A stretch of DNA of 64,000 nucleotides from IMGVR_UViG_3300031857_000002:256176-320175; one strand, 5' to 3'; positions 1-39,755 are shown, counted from the first letter of the stretch. Notes: generated from the sequence alone by a model not told the origin. Translations and numbers: made by a program.

Positions 1-411
1 CATGTGACCCAAGGTTTGTAGATCTCCCTGATTCATGTCAGTCCACAAGGTGCCTGCCACAAAGGTTGTGTCACCGATAGTCAAGCTCTCCTTTTCCATG
101 ATATGGAGGTTTCGGAGCCGGCTCAGACAGCTCCTCATGTGAGCAAGTGTGGTGGCATAGTCACCATGATAGTGTTCGTGATTGCCCAGCACATAGATCA
201 CGTGCGGGAAGCGAGCACAGCATCGTTCAAAGAAATTCTGGTAACGAGTGCTACGATAGTGCTCGCCCATTAAACCCATAGGGTCGGGCTGGGTCAAATC
301 CTTGGCCACACAGATATCGCCTGACAGGATCAGTACTTCTGCGCCTTCAGTATTGTCAAAATCTAAGTCTCCGAATTCAAGATGTATATCGGATACCACT
401 GCTATTTTCAT
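1..411 (-). CDS. Calcineurin-like metallophosphoesterase (3' end runs off the window)
   Basis: Not in ORF track; hand translation from ATG 411: MKIAVVSDIHLEFGDL...LILSGDICV...VIYVLGNHEHY (DxH, GD, GNHE motifs); frame open to position 1. Confidence 0.85.
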   Translation of the reverse strand, partial: MKIAVVSDIHLEFGDLDFDNTEGAEVLILSGDICVAKDLTQPDPMGLMGEHYRSTRYQNFFERCCARFPHVIYVLGNHEHYHGDYATTLAHMRSCLSRLRNLHIMEKESLTIGDTTFVAGTLWTDMNQGDLQTLGHM

Positions 412-751
412 CAAGTTCTTTCAATTGGGATTTCAAAGTCCGTACTGCTGTTTCATCACCATTGTAGATGGCAGCGGACTTTTCGGGATAGCGTTGTTTG
501 AATCTTTTTACTATCTCCACTAGGTTAACTCCCTGACACACAAAATCTTGTGTTATGCTATTATAACAGAAATACTGATTGTCCACAACCTCTACGGTAA
601 GAGGAATCAGTCTTTCCAATTCTAAATCATTAGATACTTCTTCAAGATCCGAATCCGTACGTCGTTTGATCATCCAGGTCATCAAGTTCAGTCCAACATG
701 GATCAGTATCATGATTACCACCCCATTCACAAGAAATTCTATAATGTCCAT
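377..751 (-). CDS. Hypothetical protein with N-terminal TM helix
   Basis: 124-aa ORF, hydrophobic N-terminus; TAAATA 5 nt before ATG; overlaps start of downstream phosphoesterase. Confidence 0.65.
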   Translation of the reverse strand: MDIIEFLVNGVVIMILIHVGLNLMTWMIKRRTDSDLEEVSNDLELERLIPLTVEVVDNQYFCYNSITQDFVCQGVNLVEIVKRFKQRYPEKSAAIYNGDETAVRTLKSQLKELDENSSGIRYTS

Positions 752-759
752 GATTGTAT

Positions 760-1062
760 TTACATCCTCATTGATTCTAAAGTGATCATCTTGCCCAGTT
801 CCTTGTCAAAGTCCAGGTCGTCAGATACCACATACAGTTTGTAGTTGGTACGATCTGTCTTGTGATCATAATGTCGGAATGACACAATCTTGCCGCCCAC
901 AGCTTTGCGAACTGTGATATTGAGTCCGTCCTCTGAGTCAATATCATTACCGCGTATGGTAACTCTGTTTCGAAGAGATTTGCTAAGAGTAGCAGGTTCT
1001 TCATCATACATATCCCGACCGTCTTGATACCATCGATAGATCAAACGTTTAACCCACTTCAT
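760..1062 (-). CDS. Hypothetical protein
   Basis: Start taken at MKWVKR (ATG overlaps TGA of upstream gene). Confidence 0.6.
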   Translation of the reverse strand: MKWVKRLIYRWYQDGRDMYDEEPATLSKSLRNRVTIRGNDIDSEDGLNITVRKAVGGKIVSFRHYDHKTDRTNYKLYVVSDDLDFDKELGKMITLESMRM

Positions 1063-1511
1063 GCTGATTTCCTTTGTTTTAAATATTGTTCCCATTGTAT
1101 CCACTGATTCTTGACCAGGAATCCCCAGTCGCGTTGTTTGGGTCCGGGCATGAACAAGGTCCAGGCTGTGATGTCAGGATCAAGTTCAATGCGATGAAAA
1201 CTGTTGGCCTTGCTGATTCTAAAATGTCCCGGTCCGCGCCACACCTGGTACTCACCAGTTTTTCTTCCCACAGTATCAAAGTGCGGGATCCATTCCCAGT
1301 AGCCACCTTTTAGTATGAGAGTGGCATAAGGCCAAGGATGGTCATGCACATCATCGGGATCTGATTTGAGAAACTTGTGCAAAAACACATTAAACGGGAA
1401 TCGTTCACGTTCCCGGAGAAACAAATAATAGCGTTCAAGATATGGTTCATTTTGTACTCGGTCCATCACAATGCGTTTGCGTCCCAAACGGTCCAAAAGT
1501 TTTAATAGCAT
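1059..1511 (-). CDS. Cupin-fold protein
   Basis: DVHDHPW...ILKGGYWE and FHRIEL cupin-type motifs; SD GGAG and own promoter. Confidence 0.65.
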   Translation of the reverse strand: MLLKLLDRLGRKRIVMDRVQNEPYLERYYLFLRERERFPFNVFLHKFLKSDPDDVHDHPWPYATLILKGGYWEWIPHFDTVGRKTGEYQVWRGPGHFRISKANSFHRIELDPDITAWTLFMPGPKQRDWGFLVKNQWIQWEQYLKQRKSA

Positions 1512-1532
1512 TGGCTACTCCTTTACAACACA

Positions 1533-1561
1533 ATTATACAACATCACGCATTATTTGTCAA
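1533..1561 (-). promoter_or_regulatory. sigma70-type (early) promoter
   Basis: TTGACA-17 bp-TATAAT, perfect consensus, upstream of cupin gene. Confidence 0.85.
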
Positions 1562-1572
1562 TAAGTATTTGG

Positions 1573-2715
1573 ATGGAAAATTATCATCCCGAAACCTATT
1601 GCACCTATGCGTTTGGTGGCTATGCCAGTCACGAAAAATGGATATGTTGTGCCGGAACAGGCCAGTTCAACAGCTTTGCCGAAGTTAACCAAAGTGAAGA
1701 AATCCAACAACTGCGGCAAGCACTACAGCGTGGTGAGCGTCATCCCACCTGTGCAGTGTGTTGGGACGCAGAAGCGGCCGGGAACGCCAGTGCCAGGTCT
1801 GTAGGATCTGCTGATCGAGACTGGCAAAGGATTCAAATTGAATTTGCAGAACCCAAACTGCGACATCTTTGGATTGACAGTGGCAGTGTATGCAACTTGG
1901 CTTGCAGAATCTGCGAACCCAGATACAGTAGCAGTCTCTACAAAGAGCACAAGGATCGATTTGGGCATACCACTGTGCCTATTACCAAGACCAATGTGGC
2001 GTATTTGATCACAGAAGACTTTAGCCAAATCGAAAACATCATGATACTAGGCGGTGAGCCATTTCTGAACCTGGACTATTGTGCTGTGTTAGAGGAAATT
2101 GTGCGCCAAGGTCGTGCTGGCCAATGTACCTTGGTGTTTTTCAGCAATGGTACTGTGCGCCCAAGTCAACGTGTGATAGATTTGCTGGCGCAGTTTTCAC
2201 AAGTGGTATTGTATTTCAGCACTGATGCTGTGGGAGACCAATTTGGGTATGTACGTACCAATGGCATCTGGTCTCAGGTCATAGACAACATCGACTACAT
2301 TGCATCGGCAAGTATTCCGCAGCTCAGGCAGAACTTTCACATAACAGTGAGCGCATTGAATGTGATGTATCTAGATGAGTTACTCTCCTGGATGGCCGAG
2401 TATTATGGTGCTGGACAAGATCCTCGTGCGGTAATTGCCCAAGCCATGAGCGAACACCGAATAACCTACATGGTAACCAATCGTCCCTCGCACTACTCGT
2501 TTGGTATTTTTACTGATGCCCAGCGTCAACAGGTATTAACACATTTGGAACATAGTGCTTTTGATCTACAAGGTATTGCAAATCAAATTACCAACTACTC
2601 CTATACACCTACACATGCTGAAAAGTTCTGGTCAGAGACTGAGTGGACCAAACAGTACCAAGGTCTAGCAGTTGAACAATACCTACCAAGGTTGGTCAAC
2701 ATCTTGCAGTCGTAA
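1573..2715 (+). CDS. Radical SAM protein with N-terminal Cys-rich (twitch/SPASM-like) segment
   Basis: CNLACRIC (CxxxCxxC), ILGGEPF, FSNG, FSTDAVG; N-terminal C..CC..CAVC; start MENY 5 nt after TAAGTA. Confidence 0.85.
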   Translation: MENYHPETYCTYAFGGYASHEKWICCAGTGQFNSFAEVNQSEEIQQLRQALQRGERHPTCAVCWDAEAAGNASARSVGSADRDWQRIQIEFAEPKLRHLWIDSGSVCNLACRICEPRYSSSLYKEHKDRFGHTTVPITKTNVAYLITEDFSQIENIMILGGEPFLNLDYCAVLEEIVRQGRAGQCTLVFFSNGTVRPSQRVIDLLAQFSQVVLYFSTDAVGDQFGYVRTNGIWSQVIDNIDYIASASIPQLRQNFHITVSALNVMYLDELLSWMAEYYGAGQDPRAVIAQAMSEHRITYMVTNRPSHYSFGIFTDAQRQQVLTHLEHSAFDLQGIANQITNYSYTPTHAEKFWSETEWTKQYQGLAVEQYLPRLVNILQS

Positions 2716-2742
2716 AAAAAGGCTGCCGTAAGCAACCTTTTT
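2716..2742. terminator. Bidirectional intrinsic terminator
   Basis: AAAAAAGGCTGCCGTAAGCAACCTTTTTT between convergent genes. Confidence 0.7.
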
Positions 2743-2776
2743 TGGTGTGACCCCTGGGATGGAGTCAGCGGGTCTA

Positions 2777-3043
2777 TTAGACCAGGCCCATGGCCATAGC
2801 TTTGTAACCAGCGGCTACTAACTTGCGGCTTGGTTTGCCAATCACATATTCTGTAACTTTAACACCATTGCCAGCCACACGCTGGTTGGCATATACTGCA
2901 AAGCCAGCTTGGCGGATGCGGCTGACTTCGGCGCTGATGTTTTTAACACCAAAACGCTTTTCAGCTTGGCTAGCTGTAACTGTCTCGCCTTTGTGCAAAG
3001 CAGAGAACAATTTGTAAGTTTTTGTTTCAGGATTGAATCGCAT
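2777..3043 (-). CDS. Small helix-turn-helix DNA-binding protein
   Basis: VTASQAEKRFGVKNISAEVSRIRQAG is HTH-like; start at MRFN. Confidence 0.55.
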   Translation of the reverse strand: MRFNPETKTYKLFSALHKGETVTASQAEKRFGVKNISAEVSRIRQAGFAVYANQRVAGNGVKVTEYVIGKPSRKLVAAGYKAMAMGLV

Positions 3044-3262
3044 ATTAAATTTACCTTTCATGTAAAAATACTGTTTGCGTACAGTATGTCACTATTATAC
3101 AGGCATTATAACACAAACACAACGGCATTTGGCACAGCATTTGCCAAAACAAAATATTTTGGCAACATGTACAAAACGTGTAAACGTTTGGCAGAGCTGT
3201 GGCGTTATATATGTGTAGCCAGGAAGGTCTTGGTCTACCAGTTTCTAATCAAGGAGATTACC

Positions 3263-3466
3263 ATGAAACAACTTATTACTCTTATTGCCACCACTGTATT
3301 TGCAGTTTCTGTTTTTGCCCAGGCACCTGCTGCCAAGAAAGAAGAAAAGAAAGCTGATGCCAAGCCTGCTGTTACAGCACCAGCACCTGCCGCAACTGCG
3401 CCAGCAACGCCTGCCAAAAGTGAGCCTGCTAAGAAAGACGACAAGAAAGACGCTTCTAAGAAGTAA
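3263..3466 (+). CDS. Small secreted Ala/Lys/Pro-rich protein
   Basis: SD AAGGAG, signal peptide MKQLITLIATTVFAVSVFA, low-complexity tail. Confidence 0.75.
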   Translation: MKQLITLIATTVFAVSVFAQAPAAKKEEKKADAKPAVTAPAPAATAPATPAKSEPAKKDDKKDASKK

Positions 3467-3647
3467 TCCTAAGGGTCTAGACGACGGTGATTTTGAAGTT
3501 GATGATGAAGTCACTTTTGGACGTAATCGGAGGAGTTTGGAGTTTGGAAAACTAGTCCACGATGAAGATCTTTCTGATTATGTGCTAGATAGATTGTACT
3601 TGGCCAGGATGTTGGCCTTGAAAAAACATCAAGAAGTTTGGACCTAA
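3357..3647 (+). CDS. Overlapping +1-frame ORF with protein-like acidic C-terminal part (start uncertain)
   Basis: 3467-3647 translates as DDGDFEVDDEV...LSDYVLDRLYLARMLALKKHQEVWT, ends just before a terminator; nearest usable upstream ATG in frame is 3357, inside previous gene. Confidence 0.45.
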   Translation: MPSLLLQHQHLPQLRQQRLPKVSLLRKTTRKTLLRSNPKGLDDGDFEVDDEVTFGRNRRSLEFGKLVHDEDLSDYVLDRLYLARMLALKKHQEVWT

Positions 3648-3652
3648 AAGGT

Positions 3653-3681
3653 AAAAAAACCTGTCGCAAGGCAGGTTTTTT
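3653..3681 (+). terminator. Intrinsic terminator
   Basis: AAAAAAACCTGTCGCAAGGCAGGTTTTTT. Confidence 0.8.
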
Positions 3682-3738
3682 AATGGTTTTGTAATATTAC
3701 GATGATAAATAGCTGTACATAAAGAAACGGCGTATATT

Positions 3739-4170
3739 ATGTTACACACAATCACATGCATCACAGAAGACCTAGAAACTCTGATCAAAGACGACCCTGT
3801 TCGTCCAGAGATACCATTGACCGATCGTGTCAATATTAACAGTCGAATGTATGTGCTCAAGGATGGTGACAAGACCGAAGCTGTGACCTGTGTGAAGTTT
3901 CTGAACTCAATTCCTGAGGCTGTGGAGGACATGGCTGGAATTGTGGAGAGTGCCACAACTGCTGTTTTTTACACAATTTGGAGTTACGCCGCAGGCGCTG
4001 GCCGTACCTTGATCCAAGAAGCCCAGAAGTCAATTGAAGCAGAGTTTCCGGGCATTGATACCTATGTGACCTTGAGTCCCAAGACTGAAATGGCTCGACG
4101 TTTCCATTTGAAGAATGGTGCTGGTATCTACCGCGAAAATTCTACCACCATCAACTACATCTATAAGTAA
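3739..4170 (+). CDS. Putative GNAT-fold acyltransferase-like protein
   Basis: FYTIWSY..GAGRTLI (motif A-like) and ARRFHLKNGA (motif B-like). Confidence 0.5.
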   Translation: MLHTITCITEDLETLIKDDPVRPEIPLTDRVNINSRMYVLKDGDKTEAVTCVKFLNSIPEAVEDMAGIVESATTAVFYTIWSYAAGAGRTLIQEAQKSIEAEFPGIDTYVTLSPKTEMARRFHLKNGAGIYRENSTTINYIYK

Positions 4171-4242
4171 ACATGCTCGTGTAGCAATCTTGTCCTGCAA
4201 GGGGCGGGACTTGAACGACACACACATACACAGGAGAAAAAC

Positions 4243-4470
4243 ATGAGCAAAACACCTTACGAGATCCGTCTCGAACTTCTTAATCTGGCCAAAGAAATTC
4301 TTTCAACACCAGTCCATGAAAAACGCAACAAACTCAGCGACGAATATCATTCCAAACTGACTGATGCCAATCGTGATAGTTTACCGTTTCCAACCATGCC
4401 CGACTTTCCGTCAACAACGGCCATTGTTGCTGAAGCAGAAGCACTCAAGAAGTTTGTAGACCAAGCGTAA
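4243..4470 (+). CDS. Small hypothetical protein (KTPYEIRLELL)
   Basis: SD CAGGAGA, 75 aa, terminator follows. Confidence 0.75.
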   Translation: MSKTPYEIRLELLNLAKEILSTPVHEKRNKLSDEYHSKLTDANRDSLPFPTMPDFPSTTAIVAEAEALKKFVDQA

Positions 4471-4497
4471 AAAACAAAAGCCCCGCAAGGGGCTTTC
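4471..4497. terminator. Bidirectional intrinsic terminator
   Basis: AAAAGCCCCGCAAGGGGCTTTCTT between convergent genes. Confidence 0.8.
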
Positions 4498-4845
4498 TTA
4501 TGGTTGTATGCTTTTGACGTGTTTACAATCACCTCGGAACCTAAATCCTGAACAGGTGCAAGAAAGGTAGCCATTGGCCTCAGTTACTTTGTACACATCA
4601 CCCTTTGATCCTTGAACTTCCCATACACGACCTTCGGGCTCTTCCTTTGTGACAATCTTGTACTGAGTAGAGCTCTCTACAAACTTGCGGCCACGAGTGT
4701 CAATTTTGATTGGGTTTTTGAACTGCTTGGGAGTGCCGCTACCGGGACTGACGTAGGCATACAGTTTGGTCTTGGAGTCGTTCAAGAGATAGGTGCCGTT
4801 GGGCATGCTATCTGTGTATGCGGTTGTCTCTGAGTACCACTTCAT
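4498..4845 (-). CDS. SWIM zinc-finger protein
   Basis: YKV...LSCTCSGFRFRGDCKHV = CxC-x(n)-CxH. Confidence 0.8.
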   Translation of the reverse strand: MKWYSETTAYTDSMPNGTYLLNDSKTKLYAYVSPGSGTPKQFKNPIKIDTRGRKFVESSTQYKIVTKEEPEGRVWEVQGSKGDVYKVTEANGYLSCTCSGFRFRGDCKHVKSIQP

Positions 4846-5075
4846 TCTACTAGGCCCACGCTTTTCTTGATCTCATAGCGAGCAATCTTCTCGTCAAAGT
4901 ACATGCGGGTACCTTCCATGTAAGGACTTGCTACCACAATCTCACCAATCTCTGCGGCCACTAACTGGGCAAAGCGAGTGAGAATGCTTTGAGTGTCTTC
5001 CATCTGATCCAAGGGATCTCGGTCCAGAATTGTTTGGTAGTCGTTAATGAGTTTTTGTACGTTCTGATGAATCAT
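4842..5075 (-). CDS. Hypothetical protein
   Basis: 77-aa ORF coupled to next gene by 4-nt overlap. Confidence 0.6.
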   Translation of the reverse strand: MIHQNVQKLINDYQTILDRDPLDQMEDTQSILTRFAQLVAAEIGEIVVASPYMEGTRMYFDEKIARYEIKKSVGLVE

Positions 5076-5084
5076 TTTGTTGCC

Positions 5085-5168
5085 TTAAATCTTTGTAAGA
5101 ATCCAAACCTTCACAGCAAAGATCACAACGACCACTGCTGTTGTTACAATAATTTCTAAGTCTGTCAT
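5085..5168 (-). CDS. 27-aa single-TM peptide
   Basis: MTDLEIIVTTAVVVVIFAVKVWILTKI; start overlaps stop of upstream gene; below ORF-track cutoff. Confidence 0.5.
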   Translation of the reverse strand: MTDLEIIVTTAVVVVIFAVKVWILTKI

Positions 5169-5446
5169 CACATGCTCCAGTAGGCTTCGCTGTCAACTCG
5201 GCAAGCCCAAGGTGTGTCAGCATCAATTTCCACAGGCTTGCCTGTCATCAAATTACGAACAGTGATCTTGGGTGCCGTGTAAGTGTCACGTGCCACAATG
5301 TTCAGTTGGCTTTCGTTCCAACCTGCTTTGTTGCAGAGACGTGTACGGGTGGCTTTGGCGGCACCAAATGTTTTGTATGCACGAGTTTTGTTAGGACCGT
5401 CTGTAACGATAAGACCGGTACCTTTAGCTACGATTACATAAGACAT
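5168..5446 (-). CDS. Hypothetical early protein
   Basis: Start MSYVIV after SD AAGGAG of promoter cassette. Confidence 0.7.
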   Translation of the reverse strand: MSYVIVAKGTGLIVTDGPNKTRAYKTFGAAKATRTRLCNKAGWNESQLNIVARDTYTAPKITVRNLMTGKPVEIDADTPWACRVDSEAYWSM

Positions 5447-5452
5447 CTTGAA

Positions 5453-5507
5453 CTCCTTTTTAATTACTATACAAGTATTATAGCAAATTGGGATATTTTG
5501 GTCAACC
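5453..5507 (-). repeat. Early promoter-RBS cassette, copy 1 of 6
   Basis: GGTTGACC-17 bp-TATAATACTTGTATAGTAATTAAAAAGGAG; -35 at 5500-5505, -10 at 5477-5482. Confidence 0.9.
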
Positions 5508-5534
5508 TTTTTGTGTGTTGTAAAAAAACAACAC

Positions 5535-5936
5535 TTACAGCTCAATAGCCCTGCGGAACAAGATTTCTTGTTTGGCAAATGCCTGAATCTCCCAAGGCTG
5601 GTCCAGGTACGGCACCTTGCGTCCGTAGTACTTGCCTTTCCACAGCTTGCCACGTGGGGTCAACTGCAAGGTGCCTTTGGCAAACTGTGCTACATGAGTG
5701 AGCTCGTGTGCCAGGGTTGCACCCAACAAGGTTTTGTCTTTTTGCGGTTTGATCACAACCAAGTAGGTGTCAAGGCCATTAAGCGGCACAGTGGTGCCCA
5801 GGTCCTCAAGATCACGGTCTATCATAACATGCAGGAATTTTTTGCTGGTAGTCAGTTTCAACTGCTCTAGCATGGAAGGAAGCAAGCTCTCAACAAAACG
5901 TTTGGTTTGGCCTCGGCCGTCAACATGAAATTCCAT
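5535..5936 (-). CDS. Putative Zn-metallopeptidase (HExxH)
   Basis: TLAHELTHVAQ plus downstream PWEIQA glutamate. Confidence 0.7.
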   Translation of the reverse strand: MEFHVDGRGQTKRFVESLLPSMLEQLKLTTSKKFLHVMIDRDLEDLGTTVPLNGLDTYLVVIKPQKDKTLLGATLAHELTHVAQFAKGTLQLTPRGKLWKGKYYGRKVPYLDQPWEIQAFAKQEILFRRAIEL

Positions 5937-5942
5937 GTGTCA

Positions 5943-5997
5943 CTCCTTTTTAATTACTATACAAGTATTATAGCAAATGGGGATTTATTGGTCAACC
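5943..5997 (-). repeat. Early promoter-RBS cassette, copy 2
   Basis: Near-identical to 5453-5507; TTGACC-17-TATAAT then AAGGAG. Confidence 0.9.
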
Positions 5998-6402
5998 AAA
6001 GATTTCCATGGTGTTGTACAGTTGATCCTGGGGTACATTATGCTGACGATAGCCCTCTAGTACTGTTGCAAAATAACCACGACTTGGAGGTTCATCCAAA
6101 TGTCCAGGTTGCATGTAGTAAGTTTCTGCCAACACAGTCCTGCCCTCAAACGCCACTCTAAGAGCACGGCGATTGTAGTAGTAAGGAAACCCTTCTAAGC
6201 TGTCAAGTGCTTTTAGATGGCTGTTGTTGATTTCCCACAGTACTCCGTCCACAAAAGACCCGCGACATTTTACAACATCGGCATGGGTGGCAAAACGGAA
6301 CACATGGTCAATCAAGCGGGCATGCCCAAAACTTGTTGCGCCAGGGCAACGTAGAGCCATTTCGGCCTGATTTGTGTTCATTCCATAAGAAAAATATAGC
6401 AT
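5992..6402 (-). CDS. Gamma-glutamylcyclotransferase (GGCT/AIG2-like)
   Basis: YFSYGMN, GVLWEI, LDSLEGFP..Y motifs; apparently leaderless. Confidence 0.8.
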   Translation of the reverse strand: MLYFSYGMNTNQAEMALRCPGATSFGHARLIDHVFRFATHADVVKCRGSFVDGVLWEINNSHLKALDSLEGFPYYYNRRALRVAFEGRTVLAETYYMQPGHLDEPPSRGYFATVLEGYRQHNVPQDQLYNTMEIFG

Positions 6403-6439
6403 ACAAGTATTATAGCAAACTGTAGATTAATGGTCAACC
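6402..6439 (-). repeat. Early promoter cassette, copy 3 (truncated; ATA replaced by ATG)
   Basis: GGTTGACC-17-TATAATACTTGT then ATG; no SD. Confidence 0.8.
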
Positions 6440-6502
6440 GGGAGTTATAGGAATATATTAGTGGAAACCACTAGTGGTAAATACGTAGAAGGAAATAAAA
6501 TC

Positions 6503-6673
6503 ATGACACAAACCATAGCACGACTACTGGAAAGGTTGGGTGAAATGTTCCCGGGATCTGACTACCAGAGCCGCTTGGACTCATATCTAAGCACCAAAGG
6601 CATTACCGATACTGCACAGTTGGAAACCTACATCCGACAATATCAATATTCTCAAAAGGAAACTTATCTATGA
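6503..6673 (+). CDS. Small protein, DUF3563-like
   Basis: LLERLGEMF...RLDSYLS...DTAQLETYIRQY resembles betaproteobacterial DUF3563 peptides; SD AAGGA. Confidence 0.5.
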   Translation: MTQTIARLLERLGEMFPGSDYQSRLDSYLSTKGITDTAQLETYIRQYQYSQKETYL

Positions 6674-6774
6674 AAAACTTTATCAACACACTATATGACG
6701 GTCTAATTTCTTGGGCTGAAATGATTCACGAATACCGTCAAAGCCCTGCCAGCAAATACAACTACTGGAAATGA
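6670..6774 (+). CDS. 34-aa peptide
   Basis: MKNFINTLYDGLISWAEMIHEYRQSPASKYNYWK; ATGA overlap with previous gene. Confidence 0.55.
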   Translation: MKNFINTLYDGLISWAEMIHEYRQSPASKYNYWK

Positions 6775-6776
6775 TT

Positions 6777-6860
6777 ATGGACATAGAATTAGTGGCAATT
6801 CAAATTATTCTGTTTGGTATAATAATTCTAGTGTATATGGTACAGGAGTTTGATAAATGA
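6777..6860 (+). CDS. 27-aa TM peptide
   Basis: MDIELVAIQIILFGIIILVYMVQEFDK; 2 nt after previous stop. Confidence 0.5.
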   Translation: MDIELVAIQIILFGIIILVYMVQEFDK

Positions 6861-6955
6861 GCTTGATAGAAACTCTTGTGATGTTGTTGCGCTGGAAACA
6901 ACAGGGATGGGAAGTGCATCCTTTAATTGCCGACGAATTTGCCGGCTGGATTTAA
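6857..6955 (+). CDS. 32-aa peptide
   Basis: MSLIETLVMLLRWKQQGWEVHPLIADEFAGWI; SD CAGGAG, ATGA overlap. Confidence 0.55.
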   Translation: MSLIETLVMLLRWKQQGWEVHPLIADEFAGWI

Positions 6956-6988
6956 ATAGATGTTGCAGGGTCTAACATTAAATAGATC

Positions 6989-8116
6989 ATGCAATGTAAA
7001 TTTTTAAAACATGGTCTGGCTATCAGTTACGACCACGTGGTCAAGCCCTGTTGTGAATGGCAGCAGGATTCCAATTACCCAATTCAGAATCACATCAGTC
7101 AAGTTGACCTATCAACTTGGCATCAAAAAAACAAAGTTTTTGAGCAACAATTGGCCAACAATGAATGGCCTGTAGCCTGTGGTCAATGTCAGCACAGAGA
7201 ACAACAAAATCGTCAAGACAGCATAAGATTAAACGGCAAACAATCCTATGCTCATTACACCGAAGACGATATTACTTTGGAAATTCGTCCAGGCAATGTG
7301 TGTAACTTTAGCTGCCAAACTTGCTGGCCAGAAGCCAGCAGTCGTGTGAGTCAACATCATGCACAGGCAGGATTGATTAATATCAAGTCTATTGACAGTA
7401 AACAAATAGATAACTTTGACTTTTTACTACCGATTGCCTCAAGGATCAAAGATGTAGTGTTGCTGGGCGGGGAACCATTTTATGATCCTAACTGTAAAAA
7501 GTTTCTAGCCTGGTCACAACAAAATCTTCGCAGCCGCATCACAATGTTTACCAATGGTAGTGCGGTAGACTGGGATTGGGTTGATAGTTATCCTGGACGG
7601 ATCACCATGGTGTTTAGCATAGATGCTGTGGGCACCGCAGCCGAGTACATTAGATTTGGAACCGACTGGTCACAAGTTCTATCTAATTTTCAACAGGCTC
7701 AAGCACACGCCAAGGTAGATCTACGGGTAAACATCACTGCATCTGTGTACAACTACTACCACCTGGACCAGGTGATTGATTTGTTACTGCCACACTGGCC
7801 TACAGTAGTGACATTTGGCAGTCCCAGAATTGAGTATTTTTTAGAATCCTGTGTGCCGCTAAGGCATCGTACTGCAATAATTGATCGATTACAATTGGCA
7901 TGTGTGCGCATCATGAAAAGCACAGTACCACCAGATCAAAAAACCAATGCAATAAATGCACTAAAATCTATTATTACAAATTTAAAAGTCAAGGACTGGG
8001 ACCAAGACCAGTACACCGCGTTAAAAATCTATGTGCAAAAGATGGATCAGGTCAAACATGTAACTGTGAGAGATCACTGTGAATTTTTAGCTGATGTGTT
8101 AGATTTTTCCGAATAG
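6989..8116 (+). CDS. Radical SAM protein with N-terminal Cys-rich segment
   Basis: CNFSCQTC, LLGGEPF, FTNG, FSIDAVG; N-terminal C..PCC..CGQC. Confidence 0.85.
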   Translation: MQCKFLKHGLAISYDHVVKPCCEWQQDSNYPIQNHISQVDLSTWHQKNKVFEQQLANNEWPVACGQCQHREQQNRQDSIRLNGKQSYAHYTEDDITLEIRPGNVCNFSCQTCWPEASSRVSQHHAQAGLINIKSIDSKQIDNFDFLLPIASRIKDVVLLGGEPFYDPNCKKFLAWSQQNLRSRITMFTNGSAVDWDWVDSYPGRITMVFSIDAVGTAAEYIRFGTDWSQVLSNFQQAQAHAKVDLRVNITASVYNYYHLDQVIDLLLPHWPTVVTFGSPRIEYFLESCVPLRHRTAIIDRLQLACVRIMKSTVPPDQKTNAINALKSIITNLKVKDWDQDQYTALKIYVQKMDQVKHVTVRDHCEFLADVLDFSE

Positions 8117-9230
8117 CACCAGTATTTTTTTGATCGCTAATCCAGGCAGTGGCCCCTGGAAGATTTTTTTCTATTAGTTTTTTTGATATAGAACTATCTA
8201 ATATTTGTGCCACTGCTGCCTCTACAGGCAGTCTCAGCATTAACTTTAACACATCCAAATCACGTAACAAGGTCCAAGTTAGAGTATTACCTATGTGCCA
8301 GTGTTGCCAATCATTTACCAATACATTACATATCTCGTAAGCTAACCAACGAGGGTTTGTGGTAGTCAGTGTTGATTCAAATATTTTCTGGTGTTTGGGC
8401 AACATAAAATATTCATAGTGCAAACAATCAGGATGTGTTTTTAACAGTTCTGGAATACTGGTGCCGCGGCTGGCCAAATACATGTTGGCAGTTACCGGAC
8501 TTCGCAACATAAATTCATCACCAGGTGCACCAGACGCTAGTATTGTGGGTTCTAACCAGTGATGTATTTGATTGTATGCCCAAAACTTTTTCAAGTGATG
8601 CGAATTGTATTTCCAAAAGTGATCATAATCTATGTGAAGATAATCAACTGATTCGACCTCGGCACCTGCACGTTTGAGATAACTATATACCAGCAACGAA
8701 TCAACCCCGCCTGTTAAAAACGATCGTATGGGCAAGATATTGTGTTCAATAAAATTCCTAGTTCTGGCCAGTAGTATTTCATCAACTTGATCCAGCACTT
8801 GAGATTCAGTCAACAGGGCAAGATCAAGTGTGCCAATCACATTGAAGTTCCGTAAGGTAACTGCAAGATCCAAGGTAGCCGAAATCACGTTATTGGTCCA
8901 GGCAGTGTTGCTCAATGGCACAAGATTGGTGATTTCTTTTTGTTGTTCAAACCAGATAGGAAAACTGCGGTACTTGTCTGTTTTAATTTCCAACTGATCT
9001 GTGCTGATTGCAATTACACAAAAGTTCCCCAACAGCTCAGGGCATTGTTGTTGTAATATATCAGGCAGAATCTCTAGCATTGTACCTGATTCGGAATAAC
9101 CTTTGTACACCACAAACTGATCTCCCACTATGGTCTGATTCCATCCAGCATCGGTATTGACAGTTATGCCATGCCAACGCCACTGGTGCGAAAAATCTAG
9201 ATTATCACTGTGGGAGATCGAAAAAAACAT
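8052..9230 (-). CDS. Asparagine-synthase-like PP-loop ATP pyrophosphatase
   Basis: SFLTGGVDSLL (SGGxDS-like), SGAPGDEF; N-terminal GNFCVI...TDKYRSFP resembles degenerate GATase-II part. Confidence 0.6.
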   Translation of the reverse strand: MFFSISHSDNLDFSHQWRWHGITVNTDAGWNQTIVGDQFVVYKGYSESGTMLEILPDILQQQCPELLGNFCVIAISTDQLEIKTDKYRSFPIWFEQQKEITNLVPLSNTAWTNNVISATLDLAVTLRNFNVIGTLDLALLTESQVLDQVDEILLARTRNFIEHNILPIRSFLTGGVDSLLVYSYLKRAGAEVESVDYLHIDYDHFWKYNSHHLKKFWAYNQIHHWLEPTILASGAPGDEFMLRSPVTANMYLASRGTSIPELLKTHPDCLHYEYFMLPKHQKIFESTLTTTNPRWLAYEICNVLVNDWQHWHIGNTLTWTLLRDLDVLKLMLRLPVEAAVAQILDSSISKKLIEKNLPGATAWISDQKNTGAIRKNLTHQLKIHSDLSQLHV

Positions 9231-9853
9231 TATGCTCGCTTTTCCACAATTTTGTCAGCAAGGCCATATGCTACTGCCTGTTCTGCACTGAGGAACGTGT
9301 CAAACTTCATGGCTTCATACAGTTCGTCATAGGTTTTGCCTGCTGTGTTGTGACGCACATACAATTCTGTAAGGCGCTGATTGATGCGTTTTGATTCTTC
9401 AAATGTTCTACGAGCATCTTCAAATTCAAGTTCTTGCACATGGATTGAGCCACGTGTGCTGGGAGTACCAGAACTCACACGGTGAATCATGGTGCGGCTT
9501 TCGGGCAACACAAAACGCTTGCCCGGAGCACCTGCTTGAGCCAAGAATGACCCCATACTGGCAGCTTGGCCAATAACAATGGTATGAACGTCGGGTTTGA
9601 TAAACTGCATGGTGTCGTAGATTGCAAGTCCAGCAGTAACAAGTCCGCCTGGACTGTTTATATATAGCGAAATATCCTTGTCAGGGTCTTCACTTTCGAG
9701 GTACAACAATTGGCTTACAATCAAGCTGGCTGTATGCTCCGAAACTTCTGTGTCCAACATGATAATACGATCTTTGAGCAAGCGACTGTAAATGTCGTAA
9801 CTGCGCTCACCTTTTGAGGTTTGTTCAACAACCATTGGGATCAAACTGGGCAT
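9230..9853 (-). CDS. clpP: ATP-dependent Clp protease proteolytic subunit
   Basis: [38 protein letters not shown] (Ser), MIHR (His), FDTFLSA (Asp). Confidence 0.95.
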
Positions 9854-9914
9854 AAATTCTCCTGTGTTATGTAATGCTCTGTGATAAGTATAACATAATT
9901 CTCTGGGAAATACA

Positions 9915-11174
9915 ATGCGCGACCTACTCGATTTACTCAAACTCTACGAAGCACCATCTAACAACTTGCCAAATGTTGATGAAATAGAAGCCTTTAAAAA
10001 GATCATTGCTGGCAAAATCAAACAACTCCCCGACGATGACAACACTGCCAAGGCACTTCGTGAAATTGAGGACCTGCTTAAACACGTGAATGCCGGGGGA
10101 AAAATGGGCATTATCAATGGCGAACTGGCCAGTGTCGATGACCCCACTGTGAGTGCGGCACAAAAGGAATTGGCCAGATATATCATGAGCATTGACATGA
10201 CTCCTGCTGATCGTGATCAATTGTTTACATTATGGCGCAACAACAAGTTGGTCAAGATTGATCAACTGTTGGGACCTGGCAAAAAGAACTTTAGCGAAAT
10301 CATCACTGGCTATAAAACAAACCCTGCTATCCGTGAATTGAGCAATGAACTCATGCGTATCAGTGCTCTAGGACAGGGCAAGGGCGAGTTTGGTCTCAGT
10401 GTCATGAGCAAAAGCATCAACAAACAAGAAGGCAAGGGCGACCTGAACATCAGTGGACGACCTATTGAAGTCAAAACAACAGATGGCGGTGCAGGTCGAT
10501 TCACTGACCAGGAAGTGCGCCCAGGCGCAGGGTTTGATCAGGCAGCTCGTCAACTGAACGCATTTATTAAACAATATCAACCCAACTTGGCCAAGAGTGG
10601 TGCCAACCTAGACGGACTTATTGGATTTTATGAAGTGTTAAAGACCAACCCTGATCTCAAGGAAGATGCGGCAGCATTACTTGACATGATCAGCAATGTG
10701 ATTCAAAATATTTTTGAAGGCGAAGATATTTCTAAGATTATCAAGGCCATCGAGCGCAGTGATGTAAACGGCGCCAAGCAGGAGTATGCCAAGGCCAACT
10801 TCAACTACTACATGAGCAAGAAAAAAGACGAGGGTGTGTTATACATTAGTTTAGTCAAAGATCCAATCATGACAGTGTTCTTTAAAGATGCTGATGAGTT
10901 GGCCGACAGTGGATTGCGCTTGCATGCTGGCACGACATACATTACCAGCACTTCGGATGTTCGCTTGCCATATCCGCAGATAGAAATTGTGGATACTACC
11001 GGTGGTGCAGGTGCAGGTGATGGCTCAGCTAACGCAGTCAATCCAGCGGCCTTGAGCAATCAAGATCTTGATGCTGTCAGCACAGGCGGACTACGTGGCC
11101 CAGGTGCAAAAAAAGCCCGAGCTCCAGTAGAACCTGATTTTGATGAGAAAACTACAGGGCGTAGAAAACGTTAA
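9915..11174 (+). CDS. Putative virion-internal protein with PD-(D/E)xK nuclease-like motif
   Basis: Leader [12 protein letters not shown]; GKGEFG...[16 protein letters not shown] (E...D...ExK). Confidence 0.5.
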
Positions 11175-16638: not shown

Positions 16639-18873
16639 TTATTTGTATTGTAAGTTCACCAGTTCTTGGTGTAATCGATCACTGGCTAGTCCACGCAACA
16701 ATCTCACATTGTCAACGTTGACTTGATTTCGATAAATCTCTCGTGGTGCATAAAAGCTCGCATCTGGCATGGCCACTGCGTATGCTTGATAACCTTGAGG
16801 TTGTGTTGCCATTGTTGCAATGTCTACTCGGCCTGCTAATTCATTTGGTTGAACATTCTTGTTTACTGCGTCTGTTTTTTGTTCTTGTGCATTTGCGTTT
16901 AATATCGCTGGACGTTGTTCCATTGCATCATTTAATGCTGACCGTCCACCCACTTTGATACCTTCATTCTGTGGAACTTCTACGTCTGGTTGTCTGTTAT
17001 TAATGCCCGGTGGTGCTTGTAAACTGTACATATCAAATTGACTCTGCATCATACTTGAGGATAACGATGCGCTTGGGTCAGCAAATACGCTTTGTGTTGC
17101 TGGACGTAGTCCACCAACATTGACCACGCTAGTTTGTGATACACTGGCTACATTTACTGCAGGTGCCTGTGATTGAATGTTAACAGTCGCAGACAATCCT
17201 GTACTTGTATTAGATTGTGTCATACTGCTAGAGATACTTTGTGTAGTTAATGTGCCTGCGACATTTTCTGCTTGTTGTTGTGCCTGTTGTGCATCTTTGG
17301 CTGCGGCTGACTCTGCGGCTTGAACCACTGTTTTGGCTTCGTTGCCTATTCTAGCTTGATTACTACTAATCATACTCATAACACTACTTAAACTAGGACT
17401 TGATTTGCTAGTGCTGTCACCTGCTGTTTTAACTTCGCCTGCTTTGGGTTGACTGCCGCCACCTTGCGGAGGAGGTTGATTTGCTGGTGTATTATTTGTA
17501 TTAGAAGCCGGCGGAGGTGGACCTTCTCGGGGAGGTGGACTACCTGGTGGCGGTTCTGAGCCTGGTGGAGGGGGAGGACTACCCGGTGGCGGTGGACTGC
17601 CAGGAGGAGGTGGAGGCTGTGTAGGATCATTCGCTGACATTCCTGTTGCAGGATCCATTGTTGAGGACTGTGTACCATCTGTAGTTGATGTGCTTGCCGG
17701 CGCAAGTTGTTTTGCTATAGCGAATGCATATCCTTTACAATTTGAACTGTATAAAGGATTAGCTATACAAGGATCAGCAGTGTAAATCATTGTTGCCCAA
17801 GCACCTTCTATAGACGAATTTGTACCTGATGCGGACCCTACAATTCTACTCGTACCCAGTAATGATTGATTCATACTTGATGGCAACAGATATTTGTCAC
17901 TAACTGATCCACTAGTGCCGTCACCTGTAAAACTATAACTCTTTGAATGTATAGACTGGTTGTTACTATTAGTAAGTGAGAATGTTGCATTTGCATATGC
18001 AGGCACGTTCATATACCATGAACACGATCCGTCTTGGTTGGTAGCAGTACATCCGTACCAACTTTGTCCAACTCTCCAATTAAACCCGTAATTAAATCCA
18101 TGTACTCTAGCACCAACACCTGCACTTTGTAATGCTGTATTAATAGCAAATGCTTGATTTAGACTAGAACCACCTTGAGTTGAATCTAATAAATTATTAG
18201 TGTTAAGAATGTTACCAAAGCCAGCACAAGTTGAACTATAAGCAGGATTACTAGCACAGGGATCAACTGAGTATTTTAATTTAGCGTATACATCAGTAAC
18301 CACCGGCCCATACAAACCAGCCCAGCCTCCCGAGTCAACACCGGAGAATGAAATGTTTAGTTTATTAAGACCAGTGAGTGTGTATGGAGTTGCAAAGGTA
18401 ACATTCTGATTTTCTTGCTGCCAGGCATATAGCCACGTGTTATAATTAAAATTCTGAGAATATACATTAGTACCTGCTGAGTTAGTTAAACTAACATTAG
18501 CACTTAATTGATCAACTATGCCATTTGAATCAGTGCAAGATTGTTCCCCACCTATTTGGTTCTTACACCAGTTAGCATACCGCCATCCATATTGTAGCCC
18601 GTTGACTACAATGCCTGTTCCATTTAAGGCTTGATTGACTGCAATTGATTGTGATACGGTGCCAGCTTGCCAACTAAATTGATAACCATAACTGCCCCCA
18701 GCGCCAAACAACCCGGGTTCACCATTTCCAGTTGCGGTCCATCCAGTAGATCCGTTGGTGAATACTGGATTGGTAATCAAATTACCAGTAATAGATATAT
18801 CTTGACTGTTAGAATAGCTTGTGAGCAAGAACGCCAAGGATAGCGCCAATGCCAACTTTCTTATAAGTGTCAT
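16639..18873 (-). CDS. Large secreted protein with duplicated beta-rich domains and Pro-rich linker
   Basis: Signal peptide; two related modules each ending DPC..NP.YS..C; PPPPGS repeats; low-complexity C-half. Confidence 0.75.
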   Translation of the reverse strand: MTLIRKLALALSLAFLLTSYSNSQDISITGNLITNPVFTNGSTGWTATGNGEPGLFGAGGSYGYQFSWQAGTVSQSIAVNQALNGTGIVVNGLQYGWRYANWCKNQIGGEQSCTDSNGIVDQLSANVSLTNSAGTNVYSQNFNYNTWLYAWQQENQNVTFATPYTLTGLNKLNISFSGVDSGGWAGLYGPVVTDVYAKLKYSVDPCASNPAYSSTCAGFGNILNTNNLLDSTQGGSSLNQAFAINTALQSAGVGARVHGFNYGFNWRVGQSWYGCTATNQDGSCSWYMNVPAYANATFSLTNSNNQSIHSKSYSFTGDGTSGSVSDKYLLPSSMNQSLLGTSRIVGSASGTNSSIEGAWATMIYTADPCIANPLYSSNCKGYAFAIAKQLAPASTSTTDGTQSSTMDPATGMSANDPTQPPPPPGSPPPPGSPPPPPGSEPPPGSPPPREGPPPPASNTNNTPANQPPPQGGGSQPKAGEVKTAGDSTSKSSPSLSSVMSMISSNQARIGNEAKTVVQAAESAAAKDAQQAQQQAENVAGTLTTQSISSSMTQSNTSTGLSATVNIQSQAPAVNVASVSQTSVVNVGGLRPATQSVFADPSASLSSSMMQSQFDMYSLQAPPGINNRQPDVEVPQNEGIKVGGRSALNDAMEQRPAILNANAQEQKTDAVNKNVQPNELAGRVDIATMATQPQGYQAYAVAMPDASFYAPREIYRNQVNVDNVRLLRGLASDRLHQELVNLQYK

Positions 18874-38189: not shown

Positions 38190-38597
38190 TTACCATGAAC
38201 TATTATAAAACACTTTGAGTCCCATGAACAACTCTGCACGAGCATTTTTAATGAACTCAAGATCGTCTTTACGGTAGTGCTCGTCTGCGTCGTTGCCAAA
38301 GAAGAATCCTGATGTACCGGGCAAGGTGCCTGCAATGACATCAAGTTCTAGTCGTTCAAGATCATCATATGTTAGCTCAAGCTCGTCACCATTGAAGTCG
38401 CCCGAGTTGCCTTGACTCTCCCACAACTGTTGCATCCAGCCATGCAGGTTAGGATGTTTACGCCAGTAAGCAATCTCACGTGGCTTGGTCACAGGCGAGA
38501 TAAGTTCTTTTGAATCGTTGTCCCAATTGGCGGTGTCGTAGTATTCTTTTTGTTGGCCTGCACGAGCGGCCACGTATGCATACATATCAAGACCCAT
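38190..38597 (-). CDS. Hypothetical phage protein (MGLDMY type)
   Basis: MGLDMY...EIAYWRKHPNLHGW...LP...GFFFG...Y.SSW. Confidence 0.75.
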   Translation of the reverse strand: MGLDMYAYVAARAGQQKEYYDTANWDNDSKELISPVTKPREIAYWRKHPNLHGWMQQLWESQGNSGDFNGDELELTYDDLERLELDVIAGTLPGTSGFFFGNDADEHYRKDDLEFIKNARAELFMGLKVFYNSSW

Positions 38598-38869: not shown

Positions 38870-38875
38870 TTCAGG

Positions 38876-38927
38876 CTCCTTTTAGTTACTATACAAGTAT
38901 TATAGCAAAATGGGATTTATTGGTCAA
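38876..38927 (-). repeat. Early promoter-RBS cassette, copy 4
   Basis: TTGACC-17-TATAATACTTGTATAGTAACTAAAAGGAG. Confidence 0.9.
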
Positions 38928-38933
38928 TCAAAC

Positions 38934-39320
38934 TTATACAGTTTGGTTTGCTACAAGTCGACGGATGCGTTGACCCATGTCCTCGGGCGTGTCGCCTTTG
39001 CCTGTGAGCATGTAGGCAGTGTACTCCACCATGTCGGCCTGTTTGAACTCCAAGGCAATACCCAAGTTCCGGAACACAAGGTTGACTTGTTTAAGAGTTT
39101 CTTCCACTGTTTTTTGTACAATGTCTAAGTGATCGGGGTCAACTTCGTCTTGCTCGTAGCCCATGTCACCTAACACGTCGTGAAAGGCTATTTGGTCATC
39201 CATAATGCAGAACTTGCCAAAAGCCTTGTTCAGGGTTTCGTCGCCAAAGTCCTCAATGTGCTCTCCAATGTCGTTGCTGTCAATCCAGGAAAGTTCTGTC
39301 TGTTTTGTGTATGTGTGCAT
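38934..39320 (-). CDS. Acidic hypothetical early protein
   Basis: 128 aa between cassette copies 5 and 4. Confidence 0.7.
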   Translation of the reverse strand: MHTYTKQTELSWIDSNDIGEHIEDFGDETLNKAFGKFCIMDDQIAFHDVLGDMGYEQDEVDPDHLDIVQKTVEETLKQVNLVFRNLGIALEFKQADMVEYTAYMLTGKGDTPEDMGQRIRRLVANQTV

Positions 39321-39326
39321 TGTTGG

Positions 39327-39380
39327 CTCCTTTTAGTTACTATACAAGTATTATAGCAAAATGGGATTTATTGGTCAACC
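39327..39380 (-). repeat. Early promoter-RBS cassette, copy 5
   Basis: Essentially identical to copy 4. Confidence 0.9.
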
Positions 39381-39650: not shown

Positions 39651-39656
39651 TGCTAA

Positions 39657-39711
39657 CTCCTTTTTAATTACTATACAAGTATTATAGCAAAATGGGATTT
39701 ATTGGTCAACC
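39657..39711 (-). repeat. Early promoter-RBS cassette, copy 6
   Basis: Near-identical to copy 2. Confidence 0.9.
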
Positions 39712-39755
39712 AAAAAAATGTGGCAAAAAAGCCACACTTTTAAGTGATTTTGTGC

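What the first reader, a model, noticed from the sequence alone, without database searches (positions are those of the whole stretch)
5453..6439. Portable ~55-bp promoter+RBS cassette, cluster 1 (three copies, one gene each)
Seen: GGTTGACC-N17-TATAATACTTGTATAGTAATTAAAAAGGAG at 5453 and 5943 and a truncated copy at 6402, each heading a single small early gene. Identity extends through the spacer and +1 region, beyond what promoter function needs. In copy 3 the ATA at +1 is ATG, turning it into a leaderless start. Inference: the repeats act as recombination points for shuffling early/host-takeover genes, like PeSL elements of some T4-like phages, or carry a site for a phage regulator.
Basis: partly seen in the sequence, partly recalled or inferred. 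Interest (0 to 1): 0.62.

Follow-up and report, generated by a model that had tools for sequence, protein, structure and literature searches.

The report
Repeated early promoter cassette of phage
A giant T4-like lake phage puts the same ~55-base host-type promoter plus ribosome-binding leader in front of many small early genes. The copies also serve as occasional crossover points for swapping those genes. This closely resembles the known PeSL cassettes of T4-like phages, with the added twist that some copies are fused directly to the start codon (leaderless).

Summary
It lies on the minus strand: three copies at 5447-5507, 5937-5997 and 6403-6439, three more at 38870-39711, and 13 in the 320-kb genome, all on one strand (0 expected by chance).

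Each copy has GG, a consensus -35, a 17-bp spacer, a TGn-extended -10, a 6-nt discriminator, a predicted +1 A, an unstructured 24-nt leader, AAGGAG and ATG.

The genome is a T4-type jumbo phage (gp23 and gp20 hits). It probably infects freshwater Comamonadaceae.

Copy 3 is truncated at +2, so the ATG of a gamma-glutamyl cyclotransferase gene sits at +1. Three results support this as the true start:
- The Pfam match begins at residue 3.
- An ortholog with a Shine-Dalgarno site starts at the same Met.
- Across six related genomes, ATG lies exactly 6 nt after the -10 in 54 of 289 promoters.

Comparison with five related genomes shows recombination inside cassettes:
- four gene-module indels bounded by two cassettes;
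- one hybrid cassette;
- one leader swap.

However, neighbouring promoter-less gene boundaries are broken just as often, and most indels are not cassette-bounded. A regulator site is not supported.

Verdict: a PeSL-like early promoter and translation cassette. It is a new variant of a known kind and of moderate interest.

The parts
6403..6439 (-). Cassette copy 3, truncated and leaderless: GG 6438-6439, -35 6432-6437, 17-bp spacer, TGn plus -10 6409-6414, discriminator 6403-6408. The predicted +1 is the A of the ATG at 6402.
5992..6402 (-). Gene for a 136-aa gamma-glutamyl cyclotransferase-like protein (GGACT/AIG2), read as a leaderless mRNA. Its TGA stop (5992-5994) lies inside the -35 hexamer of copy 2.
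   Evidence: Pfam GGACT E 1.5e-11 from residue 3; phrog_2520 E 3.3e-23. The G001 ortholog starts at the same Met behind a Shine-Dalgarno site.
5937..5997 (-). Cassette copy 2, full: -35 5990-5995, -10 5967-5972, predicted +1 5960, AAGGAG 5943-5948, ATG 5934-5936.
5535..5936 (-). Gene for a 133-aa protein with an HExxH motif. It gives weak matches to DUF6782 (putative metallopeptidase) and matches phrog_10499.
5515..5534 (-). Stem-loop (6-bp stem, A/T loop) directly after the stop of gene 5535-5936 and 9 nt before copy 1. It has no U-tract, so at most it acts as an attenuator.
   Evidence: upstream fold -12.4 kcal/mol
5447..5507 (-). Cassette copy 1, full: -35 5500-5505, -10 5477-5482, predicted +1 5470, AAGGAG 5453-5458, ATG 5444-5446.
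5168..5446 (-). Gene for a 92-aa protein of unknown function. In relatives it sits behind different upstream genes and different promoter variants.
4476..5168 (-). Rest of the transcription unit: a 28-codon hydrophobic ORF (about 5082-5168), gene 4842-5075, gene 4498-4845, and an intrinsic terminator at 4476-4497.
39651..39740 (-). Cluster 2, first cassette (-35 39704-39709, ATG 39648-39650). A hairpin followed by a T7 run (about 39714-39740) lies immediately upstream.
39321..39380 (-). Cluster 2, second cassette (-35 39373-39378, ATG 39318-39320). The stop codon of gene 39375-39650 lies in its -35.
38934..39320 (-). 128-aa gene found only in this genome among the six compared. Together with one cassette it forms a 451-bp module that is missing in G004.
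38870..38929 (-). Cluster 2, third cassette (-35 38922-38927, ATG 38867-38869). It heads gene 38597-38869 (DUF7464-like).

Best explanation
The repeat is a strong host-RNA-polymerase (sigma-70 type) early promoter fused to a standard translation leader. A T4-type jumbo phage places it in front of many small accessory genes.

What the sequence shows directly:
- a consensus -35;
- a 17-bp spacer;
- a TGn-extended consensus -10;
- a 6-nt discriminator;
- an A at the position expected for +1;
- a 24-nt A/U-rich leader with no predicted structure;
- AAGGAG 6-7 nt before the ATG.

Arrays of two to four cassettes follow one upstream hairpin and have no terminator between them. I infer that the promoters are nested and that distal genes receive additive transcription.

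In about 40% of copies the TGA inside the -35 hexamer is the stop codon of the upstream gene.

In copy 3 the cassette is cut at +2, so the mRNA begins with the AUG of the cyclotransferase gene. Translation there would be leaderless (inferred).

The copies share an identical core of about 30 bp and occur as a few discrete leader haplotypes. They are therefore propagated by copying.

They also act secondarily as patches of homology for the phage recombination system. Crossovers inside the core delete, insert or re-pair a gene with a new upstream neighbour, while keeping both the upstream stop and the downstream start intact. This was shown by comparative sequence only, not by experiment.
For: Promoter anatomy and copy number.

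The same 19-mer occurs in at least 119 stretches of IMG/VR contigs. In those loci the leader positions outside the search pattern are 88-96% conserved.

In each of six genomes the 38-47 strong sigma-70-like sites lie almost entirely on one strand.

The leader folds with 0.0 kcal/mol.

The upstream ORF ends at the TGA of the -35 in 19 of 45 cassettes, against a background of 5.6%.

Leaderless reading:
- The Pfam match begins at residue 3.
- ATG lies at offset 6 in 54 of 289 promoters, against 3-11 at neighbouring offsets.
- 39 of these 54 open ORFs of at least 40 aa, against 32% for background ATGs.
- They fall into 17 gene families.
- Orthologs keep the same Met whether leaderless or Shine-Dalgarno-led.

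Recombination:
- At broken cassette junctions both partners lie next to promoters in the other genome in 20 of 30 cases.
- The G003 cassette carries the spacer of one parent and the linker of the other.
- Cassette-to-cassette indels show repeat overlaps of 43-68 bp.
- G002 and G003 carry a different 24-nt leader between identical flanks.

T4-type identity.

PeSL description: PMC2839356 and PMC4122927.
Against: There is no direct evidence of transcription. The two metatranscriptome runs are contigs, cannot show 5' ends, and may hold DNA.

Calling the promoters 'early' is by analogy with T4.

Breakage at cassettes is not higher than at promoter-less boundaries within 2 kb.

Only 4 of 70 clean indels in the closest pairs are cassette-bounded.

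Genome pairs are phylogenetically non-independent, and my gene calls are crude.

Any rearrangement with intergenic breakpoints among genes that each have a promoter would place partners next to promoters. Only the hybrid cassette, the repeat-overlap indels and the leader swap speak specifically for crossovers inside the cassette.
Confidence: 0.78

Rival explanations
1. The copies are promoters only. They are alike because each has been independently selected toward the strongest promoter and leader, and recombination at them is incidental and without consequence.
For: Every conserved block has an ordinary function: -35, TGn, -10, purine +1, unstructured A/U leader and Shine-Dalgarno site. Local promoter-less boundaries are broken as often as cassette junctions. 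Most indels are unrelated to cassettes.
Against: The discriminator and leader occur as a few discrete linked haplotypes rather than as free mixtures. There is a 24-nt patch swap between otherwise identical flanks. There is a hybrid cassette. Four indels carry a cassette-length repeat overlap.
Confidence: 0.15
2. The conserved stretch from the -10 to +7 is an operator or pause element. One option is a phage regulator binding the dyad TTGCTATA-N7-TATAGTAA. Another is sigma re-binding the -10-like TATAGT at -1 to +5. Either would switch early transcription off or modify it.
For: ATAGTAA at +1 to +7 is kept in the exact cassette and in variants whose discriminator differs (47 of 289 promoters). 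An 8-bp imperfect inverted repeat spans the -10 and +1.
Against: The hairpin is no more stable than shuffles (z -0.11). The left arm is already explained by TGn plus the -10. A copy with ATTGTAA shows no compensating change. Leaderless copies lack the right arm yet are conserved. The motif does not occur apart from promoters. No RegB, AsiA or MotA homolog was found, although those searches had silent controls.
Confidence: 0.05
3. The repeat is a self-mobile element (a miniature transposon or a homing-endonuclease target) that happens to carry a promoter.
For: Copies are dispersed in several clusters. One leaderless copy heads a small GIY-YIG protein gene.
Against: There are no terminal inverted repeats or target duplications. 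All copies are on one strand and in register with a downstream start codon. The indel boundaries are simple homologous overlaps.
Confidence: 0.02

Closest known systems
PeSL (promoter-early stem-loop) cassettes of T4-like phages RB49/phi1, PST/T4 and nt-1/KVP40 (Arbiol et al. 2010, PMC2839356; Comeau et al. 2014, PMC4122927)
   Same: Both are repeated strong sigma-70-like promoters with a Shine-Dalgarno site and start codon at the 3' end. Both stand before small accessory genes in plastic regions of a T4-type genome. In both, genes flanked by two elements are deleted or inserted with one chimeric element left behind. Both have the near-perfect TTGACA-N17-TATAAT type, as in RB49/phi1.
   Different: The stem-loop is not part of the repeat here. 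It precedes only about half of the copies, typically the first of an array, and internal copies abut coding sequence. The upstream stop codon is often the TGA inside the -35, rather than lying in an AT-rich stretch upstream. Identity runs through the discriminator and leader as discrete haplotypes. There are truncated leaderless derivatives. Mini-circles and promoter activity have not been tested here.
T4 early promoters, and the T-even internal-protein (IP) locus elements mentioned in PMC2839356
   Same: These are host-polymerase early promoters with more conserved positions than host promoters, placed before many small non-essential genes. The IP loci are shuffled at such elements (the IP loci are cited; the T4 promoter consensus is from my own knowledge).
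   Different: T4 uses GTTTAC-type -35 boxes, whereas here the -35 is the host consensus. No AsiA/MotA middle-mode system was detected (inconclusive).
Phage T5 early promoters (the PN25/P26 class), recalled from my own knowledge and not checked here
   Same: This is a set of very strong host-type promoters whose similarity extends into the initially transcribed region and ribosome-binding site, and in which the transcribed region contributes to promoter strength.
   Different: T5 belongs to a different phage family. No role in gene shuffling and no leaderless derivatives are described for it, as far as I recall.
Leaderless phage mRNAs such as lambda cI from PRM (own knowledge)
   Same: Transcription starts at the A of the AUG, and there is no Shine-Dalgarno site.
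   Different: Those are single regulatory genes of temperate phages. Here 17 gene families across six lytic T4-type genomes show the arrangement. A dRNA-seq map of jumbo phage phiKZ found no leaderless transcript (PMC8244752).

Membership tests
PeSL cassette | Strong sigma-70-like early promoter | tested here: met
   TTGACC, 17 bp, TGn and TATAAT score 11 of 12 in all six window copies. Activity itself was not measured.
PeSL cassette | Adjacent or overlapping stem-loop acting as terminator or attenuator, as part of the conserved element | tested here: inconclusive
   Compact hairpins lie upstream of 6 of 14 G000 copies. 60% of exact cassettes have an upstream fold of -10 kcal/mol or lower, against 18% of gene-end controls. 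In the window, copies at 5995, 39378 and 38927 abut coding sequence with no hairpin. The internal dyad over the -10 is not more stable than shuffles.
PeSL cassette | Shine-Dalgarno site and start codon of the downstream gene at the 3' end | tested here: met
   AAGGAG lies 6-7 nt before the ATG in 11 of 13 genome copies. The other two are leaderless.
PeSL cassette | Preferential location in hyperplastic regions before small variable genes | tested here: met
   Median gene size is 117 aa. 23% of cassette-led genes are present in all six genomes, against 40% overall. Flanking junctions within 2 kb are broken in 57% of genome pairs, against 23% genome-wide. Most of these genes have no Pfam match.
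PeSL cassette | Indels or replacements between close relatives bounded by two elements, leaving a chimeric element | tested here: met
   There are three cases between G000 and G004 and one between G002 and G003, with overlaps of 43-68 bp. The hybrid cassette is in G003.
PeSL cassette | Formation of excised mini-circles | not testable with these tools
   Only assembled contigs were available. No back-joining joint was seen.
PeSL cassette | Host genome is a T4-type myovirus | tested here: met
   Gp23 (PF07068) E 8.1e-98 and Portal_T4 (PF07230) E 2.1e-106 in G000.
Leaderless mRNA | Transcription start at, or within a few nt of, the start codon and no Shine-Dalgarno site | tested here: inconclusive
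   The ATG begins 7 nt after the -10, with no SD. Supporting evidence comes from the Pfam N-terminus, orthologs and clade-wide enrichment. The start site itself is predicted, not mapped.

The most novel reading that the evidence does not exclude
Leaderless expression is a regular design feature of this clade of T4-type jumbo phages. Roughly one in six host-type promoters is fused exactly to a start codon (17 gene families across six genomes). Orthologs flip between leaderless and Shine-Dalgarno-led forms at the same Met, possibly through recombination in the shared promoter cassette. If true, these phages would run two translation-initiation modes in parallel among their early genes. That could give a subset of genes a different timing, or different ribosome requirements, during takeover.
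Probability: 0.45. Interest if true: 0.6.

Novelty: new variant of a known kind. Interest (0 to 1): 0.45.

Why it matters
The finding extends PeSL-type regulatory cassettes from a few cultured T4-like phages to a large uncultured clade of 260-350-kb freshwater phages.

It gives unusually clean sequence-level examples of crossovers inside the cassette. It also shows a compact layout in which the -35 box doubles as the stop codon of the preceding gene.

It tempers the shuffling model. In this clade the cassettes account for only a small share of indels, and their neighbourhood is plastic regardless.

The precise promoter-to-ATG fusions offer a testable case of systematic leaderless expression in a lytic phage of Gram-negative hosts.

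On the practical side, the cassette is a compact and apparently very strong promoter-plus-leader part for Burkholderiales-type hosts.

Tried and rejected
1. DNA search of GenBank phages with 4800-7000 found no match. tblastn with the DNA ligase gave only distant hits under 40% identity, so it does not name relatives.

2. I tested whether the cassette is built to carry stop codons in all three frames. Only 23 of 45 exact cassettes have them, a rate similar to other promoters, so I rejected this idea.

3. I tested for an internal hairpin or operator over the -10. It is not more stable than shuffles.

4. Searches for RegB, AsiA and MotA in the genome found no hit. The control genomes were silent too, so absence is not shown.

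5. RNA evidence is uninformative. Two metatranscriptome runs hold short contigs over parts of the three genes, and one contig spans the copy-3 promoter region. Contigs cannot show starts, and DNA carry-over is possible.

6. I looked for excision circles. No back-joining joint was seen. One lake DNA contig joins 5998 to 6470 with 30 other letters, which is probably a relative lacking the cyclotransferase gene. The support is weak: one contig with a side of 24 letters.

7. The genome-wide enrichment of breakpoints at cassettes turned out to be regional once local controls were used.

8. The mobile-element reading was rejected. There are no terminal repeats or target duplications, and the copies have strict strand and register.

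Full report
**1. What is in the sequence.**

The pattern TTGACC, 15-19 nt, TATAATACTTGTAT matches six times in the window. The -35 boxes are at 5505, 5995, 6437, 38927, 39378 and 39709. All are on the minus strand, against none in 100 shuffles.

Reading 5' to 3' on the minus strand, a full copy consists of:
- GG;
- TTGACC;
- a 17-bp spacer ending in TTTGC, so TGn precedes the -10;
- TATAAT;
- the discriminator ACTTGT;
- an A at the position where transcription is expected to start;
- a leader ending in AAGGAG;
- 6-7 variable nt;
- ATG.

The consensus scan scores all six copies at 11 of 12 with the TG extension.

Copies 1 and 2 (5447-5507 and 5937-5997) are identical from the -10 to the Shine-Dalgarno site.

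Copy 3 (6403-6439) stops being similar two bases after the predicted +1, where ATA has become ATG.

**2. The genes and the transcription unit.**

Copy 3 heads a 136-aa gamma-glutamyl cyclotransferase-like protein (GGACT E 1.5e-11, phrog_2520 E 3.3e-23).

Copy 2 heads a 133-aa protein with an HExxH motif and weak metallopeptidase-family matches.

Copy 1 heads a 92-aa protein with no family match.

The stop codon of the cyclotransferase gene is the TGA inside the -35 box of copy 2.

A short stem-loop without a U-tract lies between gene 5535-5936 and copy 1.

No terminator follows gene 5168-5446. The next one on this strand is at 4497-4476, behind a 28-codon ORF and two further genes.

Cluster 1 is therefore best read as one unit of about 1.9 kb with three nested promoters (inference).

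Cluster 2 has the same build. A hairpin with a T7 run at about 39714-39740 is followed by three cassettes, each with a small gene.

**3. The genome.**

The window is the last 64 kb of a 320,175-bp virus record that is 92% complete.

It encodes a T4-type major capsid protein and a T4-type portal. It also encodes ribonucleotide reductase, an ATP-dependent DNA ligase and many radical-SAM paralogs.

Its PstS gene is 78-80% identical in protein to PstS of Limnohabitans and other Comamonadaceae. Its DNA is found in lake and freshwater metagenomes. A freshwater betaproteobacterial host is therefore likely (inference).

The genome holds 13 copies of the cassette, all on one strand and mostly in clusters of three to five.

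Of 55 strong TTGAC-N17-19-TAnAAT sites, 51 lie on that same strand.

**4. Relatives.**

A 19-mer from the core occurs in at least 119 stretches of IMG/VR contigs, among them records of 262-353 kb.

In those loci the leader positions that were not part of the search pattern are still 88-96% conserved. The spacer is 54-94% conserved.

I fetched five whole relatives, G001 to G005. Each has 38-47 sigma-70-like sites, almost entirely on one strand, and 4-13 exact cassettes.

Besides the exact cassette there are a few other discrete versions. They share the -35, most of the spacer, the -10 and ATAGTAA at +1 to +7. They carry other discriminators and leader tails.

Linked haplotypes of this kind point to propagation by copying rather than position-by-position convergence (inference).

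**5. The leaderless copy.**

Four lines agree that the ATG at 6402 is the real start.
- The Pfam model aligns from residue 3, and the next ATG would cut into the conserved N-terminal motif.
- No gene lies upstream on this strand, because 6440-6503 is a divergent intergenic region.
- The G004 ortholog has the same fusion. The G001 ortholog starts with the same residues behind a normal Shine-Dalgarno site and no promoter.
- Across the six genomes ATG begins exactly 6 nt after the -10 in 54 of 289 promoters, against 3-11 at offsets 4, 5, 7 and 8.

Of those 54, 39 open ORFs of at least 40 codons, against 32% for random ATGs. They fall into 17 gene families.

A second exact cassette in this genome is fused in the same way to a small GIY-YIG protein gene.

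The transcription start itself is predicted, not measured.

**6. Are the cassettes recombination points?**

*Whole-set test.* I took 250-nt flanks on either side of every promoter and of every promoter-less boundary between same-strand genes. I then asked whether both flanks stay together in each other genome.
- Junctions were broken in 45% of cases for exact cassettes.
- They were broken in 70% for variant cassettes.
- They were broken in 44% for leaderless promoters.
- They were broken in 26% for other promoters.
- They were broken in 23% for promoter-less boundaries.

Promoter-less boundaries within 2 kb of a cassette were broken in 57%. The enrichment therefore belongs to the region, not to the cassette as such.

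*Fine-scale evidence.* This is more specific.
- At broken exact-cassette junctions, both separated partners sit next to a promoter in the other genome in 20 of 30 cases.
- One G003 cassette has the upstream 12 nt and spacer of the copy that follows the same upstream gene elsewhere. It has the linker and coding start of the copy that precedes gene 5168-5446 elsewhere. This places the crossover inside the identical core.
- Between G000 and G004, three clean indels are one gene plus one cassette, with 56-68 bp of overlap at the junction. One of them is the window gene 38934-39320.
- G002 and G003 (90% identical) have one more such indel.
- G002 and G003 also differ by a 24-nt leader haplotype between otherwise identical flanks in front of one gene. 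This looks like a short conversion patch.

*Limits.* Against this, only 4 of 70 clean indels in these two pairs are cassette-bounded.

I conclude that crossovers in the cassettes are real and keep both neighbouring genes intact. They are, however, a minor source of the plasticity seen.

**7. Why identity goes beyond the hexamers.**

Part of it has a plain function:
- the end of the spacer is the TGn extension;
- the +1 is a purine after a pyrimidine;
- the leader is A/U-rich and unfolded (0.0 kcal/mol);
- the Shine-Dalgarno site is strong.

The TGA of the -35 serves as the stop of the upstream gene in 17-19 of 45 exact cassettes, against 5.6% for random TGAs.

The rest, in my reading, reflects copying and conversion among the copies.

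An operator or pause-site reading rests only on the conserved ATAGTAA and on an imperfect dyad that is no more stable than shuffles. The motif never occurs away from a promoter.

No RegB, AsiA or MotA homolog was detected, though these searches had silent controls.

**8. Comparison with what is known.**

PeSLs were described in RB49/phi1 and later in PST/T4 and nt-1/KVP40. They are conserved composites of a strong sigma-70-like promoter and a stem-loop terminator, with a Shine-Dalgarno site and start codon at the 3' end. They lie before ORFans in hyperplastic regions, flank indels, and can form mini-circles (PMC2839356, PMC4122927).

The present cassettes work like PeSLs and sit in a T4-type genome.

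They differ in four ways:
- The stem-loop is not an integral part, being present before about half of the copies.
- The upstream stop is often inside the -35.
- The conserved block includes the discriminator and leader.
- Leaderless derivatives exist.

A dRNA-seq study of jumbo phage phiKZ reported no leaderless transcripts (PMC8244752), so that last point is unusual for a large lytic phage.

I therefore rate the finding as a new variant of a known kind.

**9. Limits.**

- Gene calls for the relatives are my own crude ORF picks.
- Genome pairs are not independent.
- The metatranscriptome data were contigs only.
- Nothing here measures promoter strength, timing, translation or circle formation.

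Noticed in passing
window 1471-2715 (+) and 6989-8116 (+); family with 7-14 copies per genome in the five relatives: There is a large paralog family of radical-SAM proteins, several on the strand opposite to most genes. The copy at 6989-8116 is preceded by three or four tiny same-strand ORFs (6504-6975), an arrangement reminiscent of peptide-modification clusters.
   Followed up: partly
window 20060-21061 (-): The phosphate-binding protein PstS gene is 78-80% identical in protein to Limnohabitans/Comamonadaceae PstS. It is an auxiliary gene and the best clue to the host.
   Followed up: partly
window about 5082-5168 (-): A 28-codon hydrophobic ORF has a start that overlaps the stop of gene 5168-5446 (TGATG). 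It is possibly a small membrane peptide.
   Followed up: no
window about 6478-6489: A perfect 12-bp palindrome ACCACTAGTGGT lies in the divergent intergenic region between the leaderless promoter and the plus-strand genes. A similar sequence is present in G004.
   Followed up: no
window 5998-6470, run X4: One lake-metagenome DNA contig joins the upstream edge of copy 2 to 6470 with 30 other letters. This is apparently a relative without the cyclotransferase gene and its leaderless promoter. The support is weak.
   Followed up: partly
G000 genome 148402 (minus strand), outside the window: A consensus-type promoter is followed within about 10 nt by a tRNA gene. Some of these promoters therefore drive tRNAs directly.
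   Followed up: no
window 19369-19776 and 62021-62910: Imperfect tandem repeats with periods of 30-42 nt (19369-19698, continuing to 19776) and about 51 nt (62021-62910) lie inside long ORFs (18809-19939 minus, 61295-63163 plus). They probably encode repetitive fibre-like or low-complexity protein segments.
   Followed up: no
G002 vs G003 and G001 vs G005 whole genomes: Several clean indels show repeat overlaps of 35 bp or more that are not at recognised promoters. This points to another repeat family that also mediates deletions.
   Followed up: no
window 9230-9940 (-): A ClpP-type protease gene (Pfam CLP_protease E 2.7e-64) lies next to the early-gene region.
   Followed up: no
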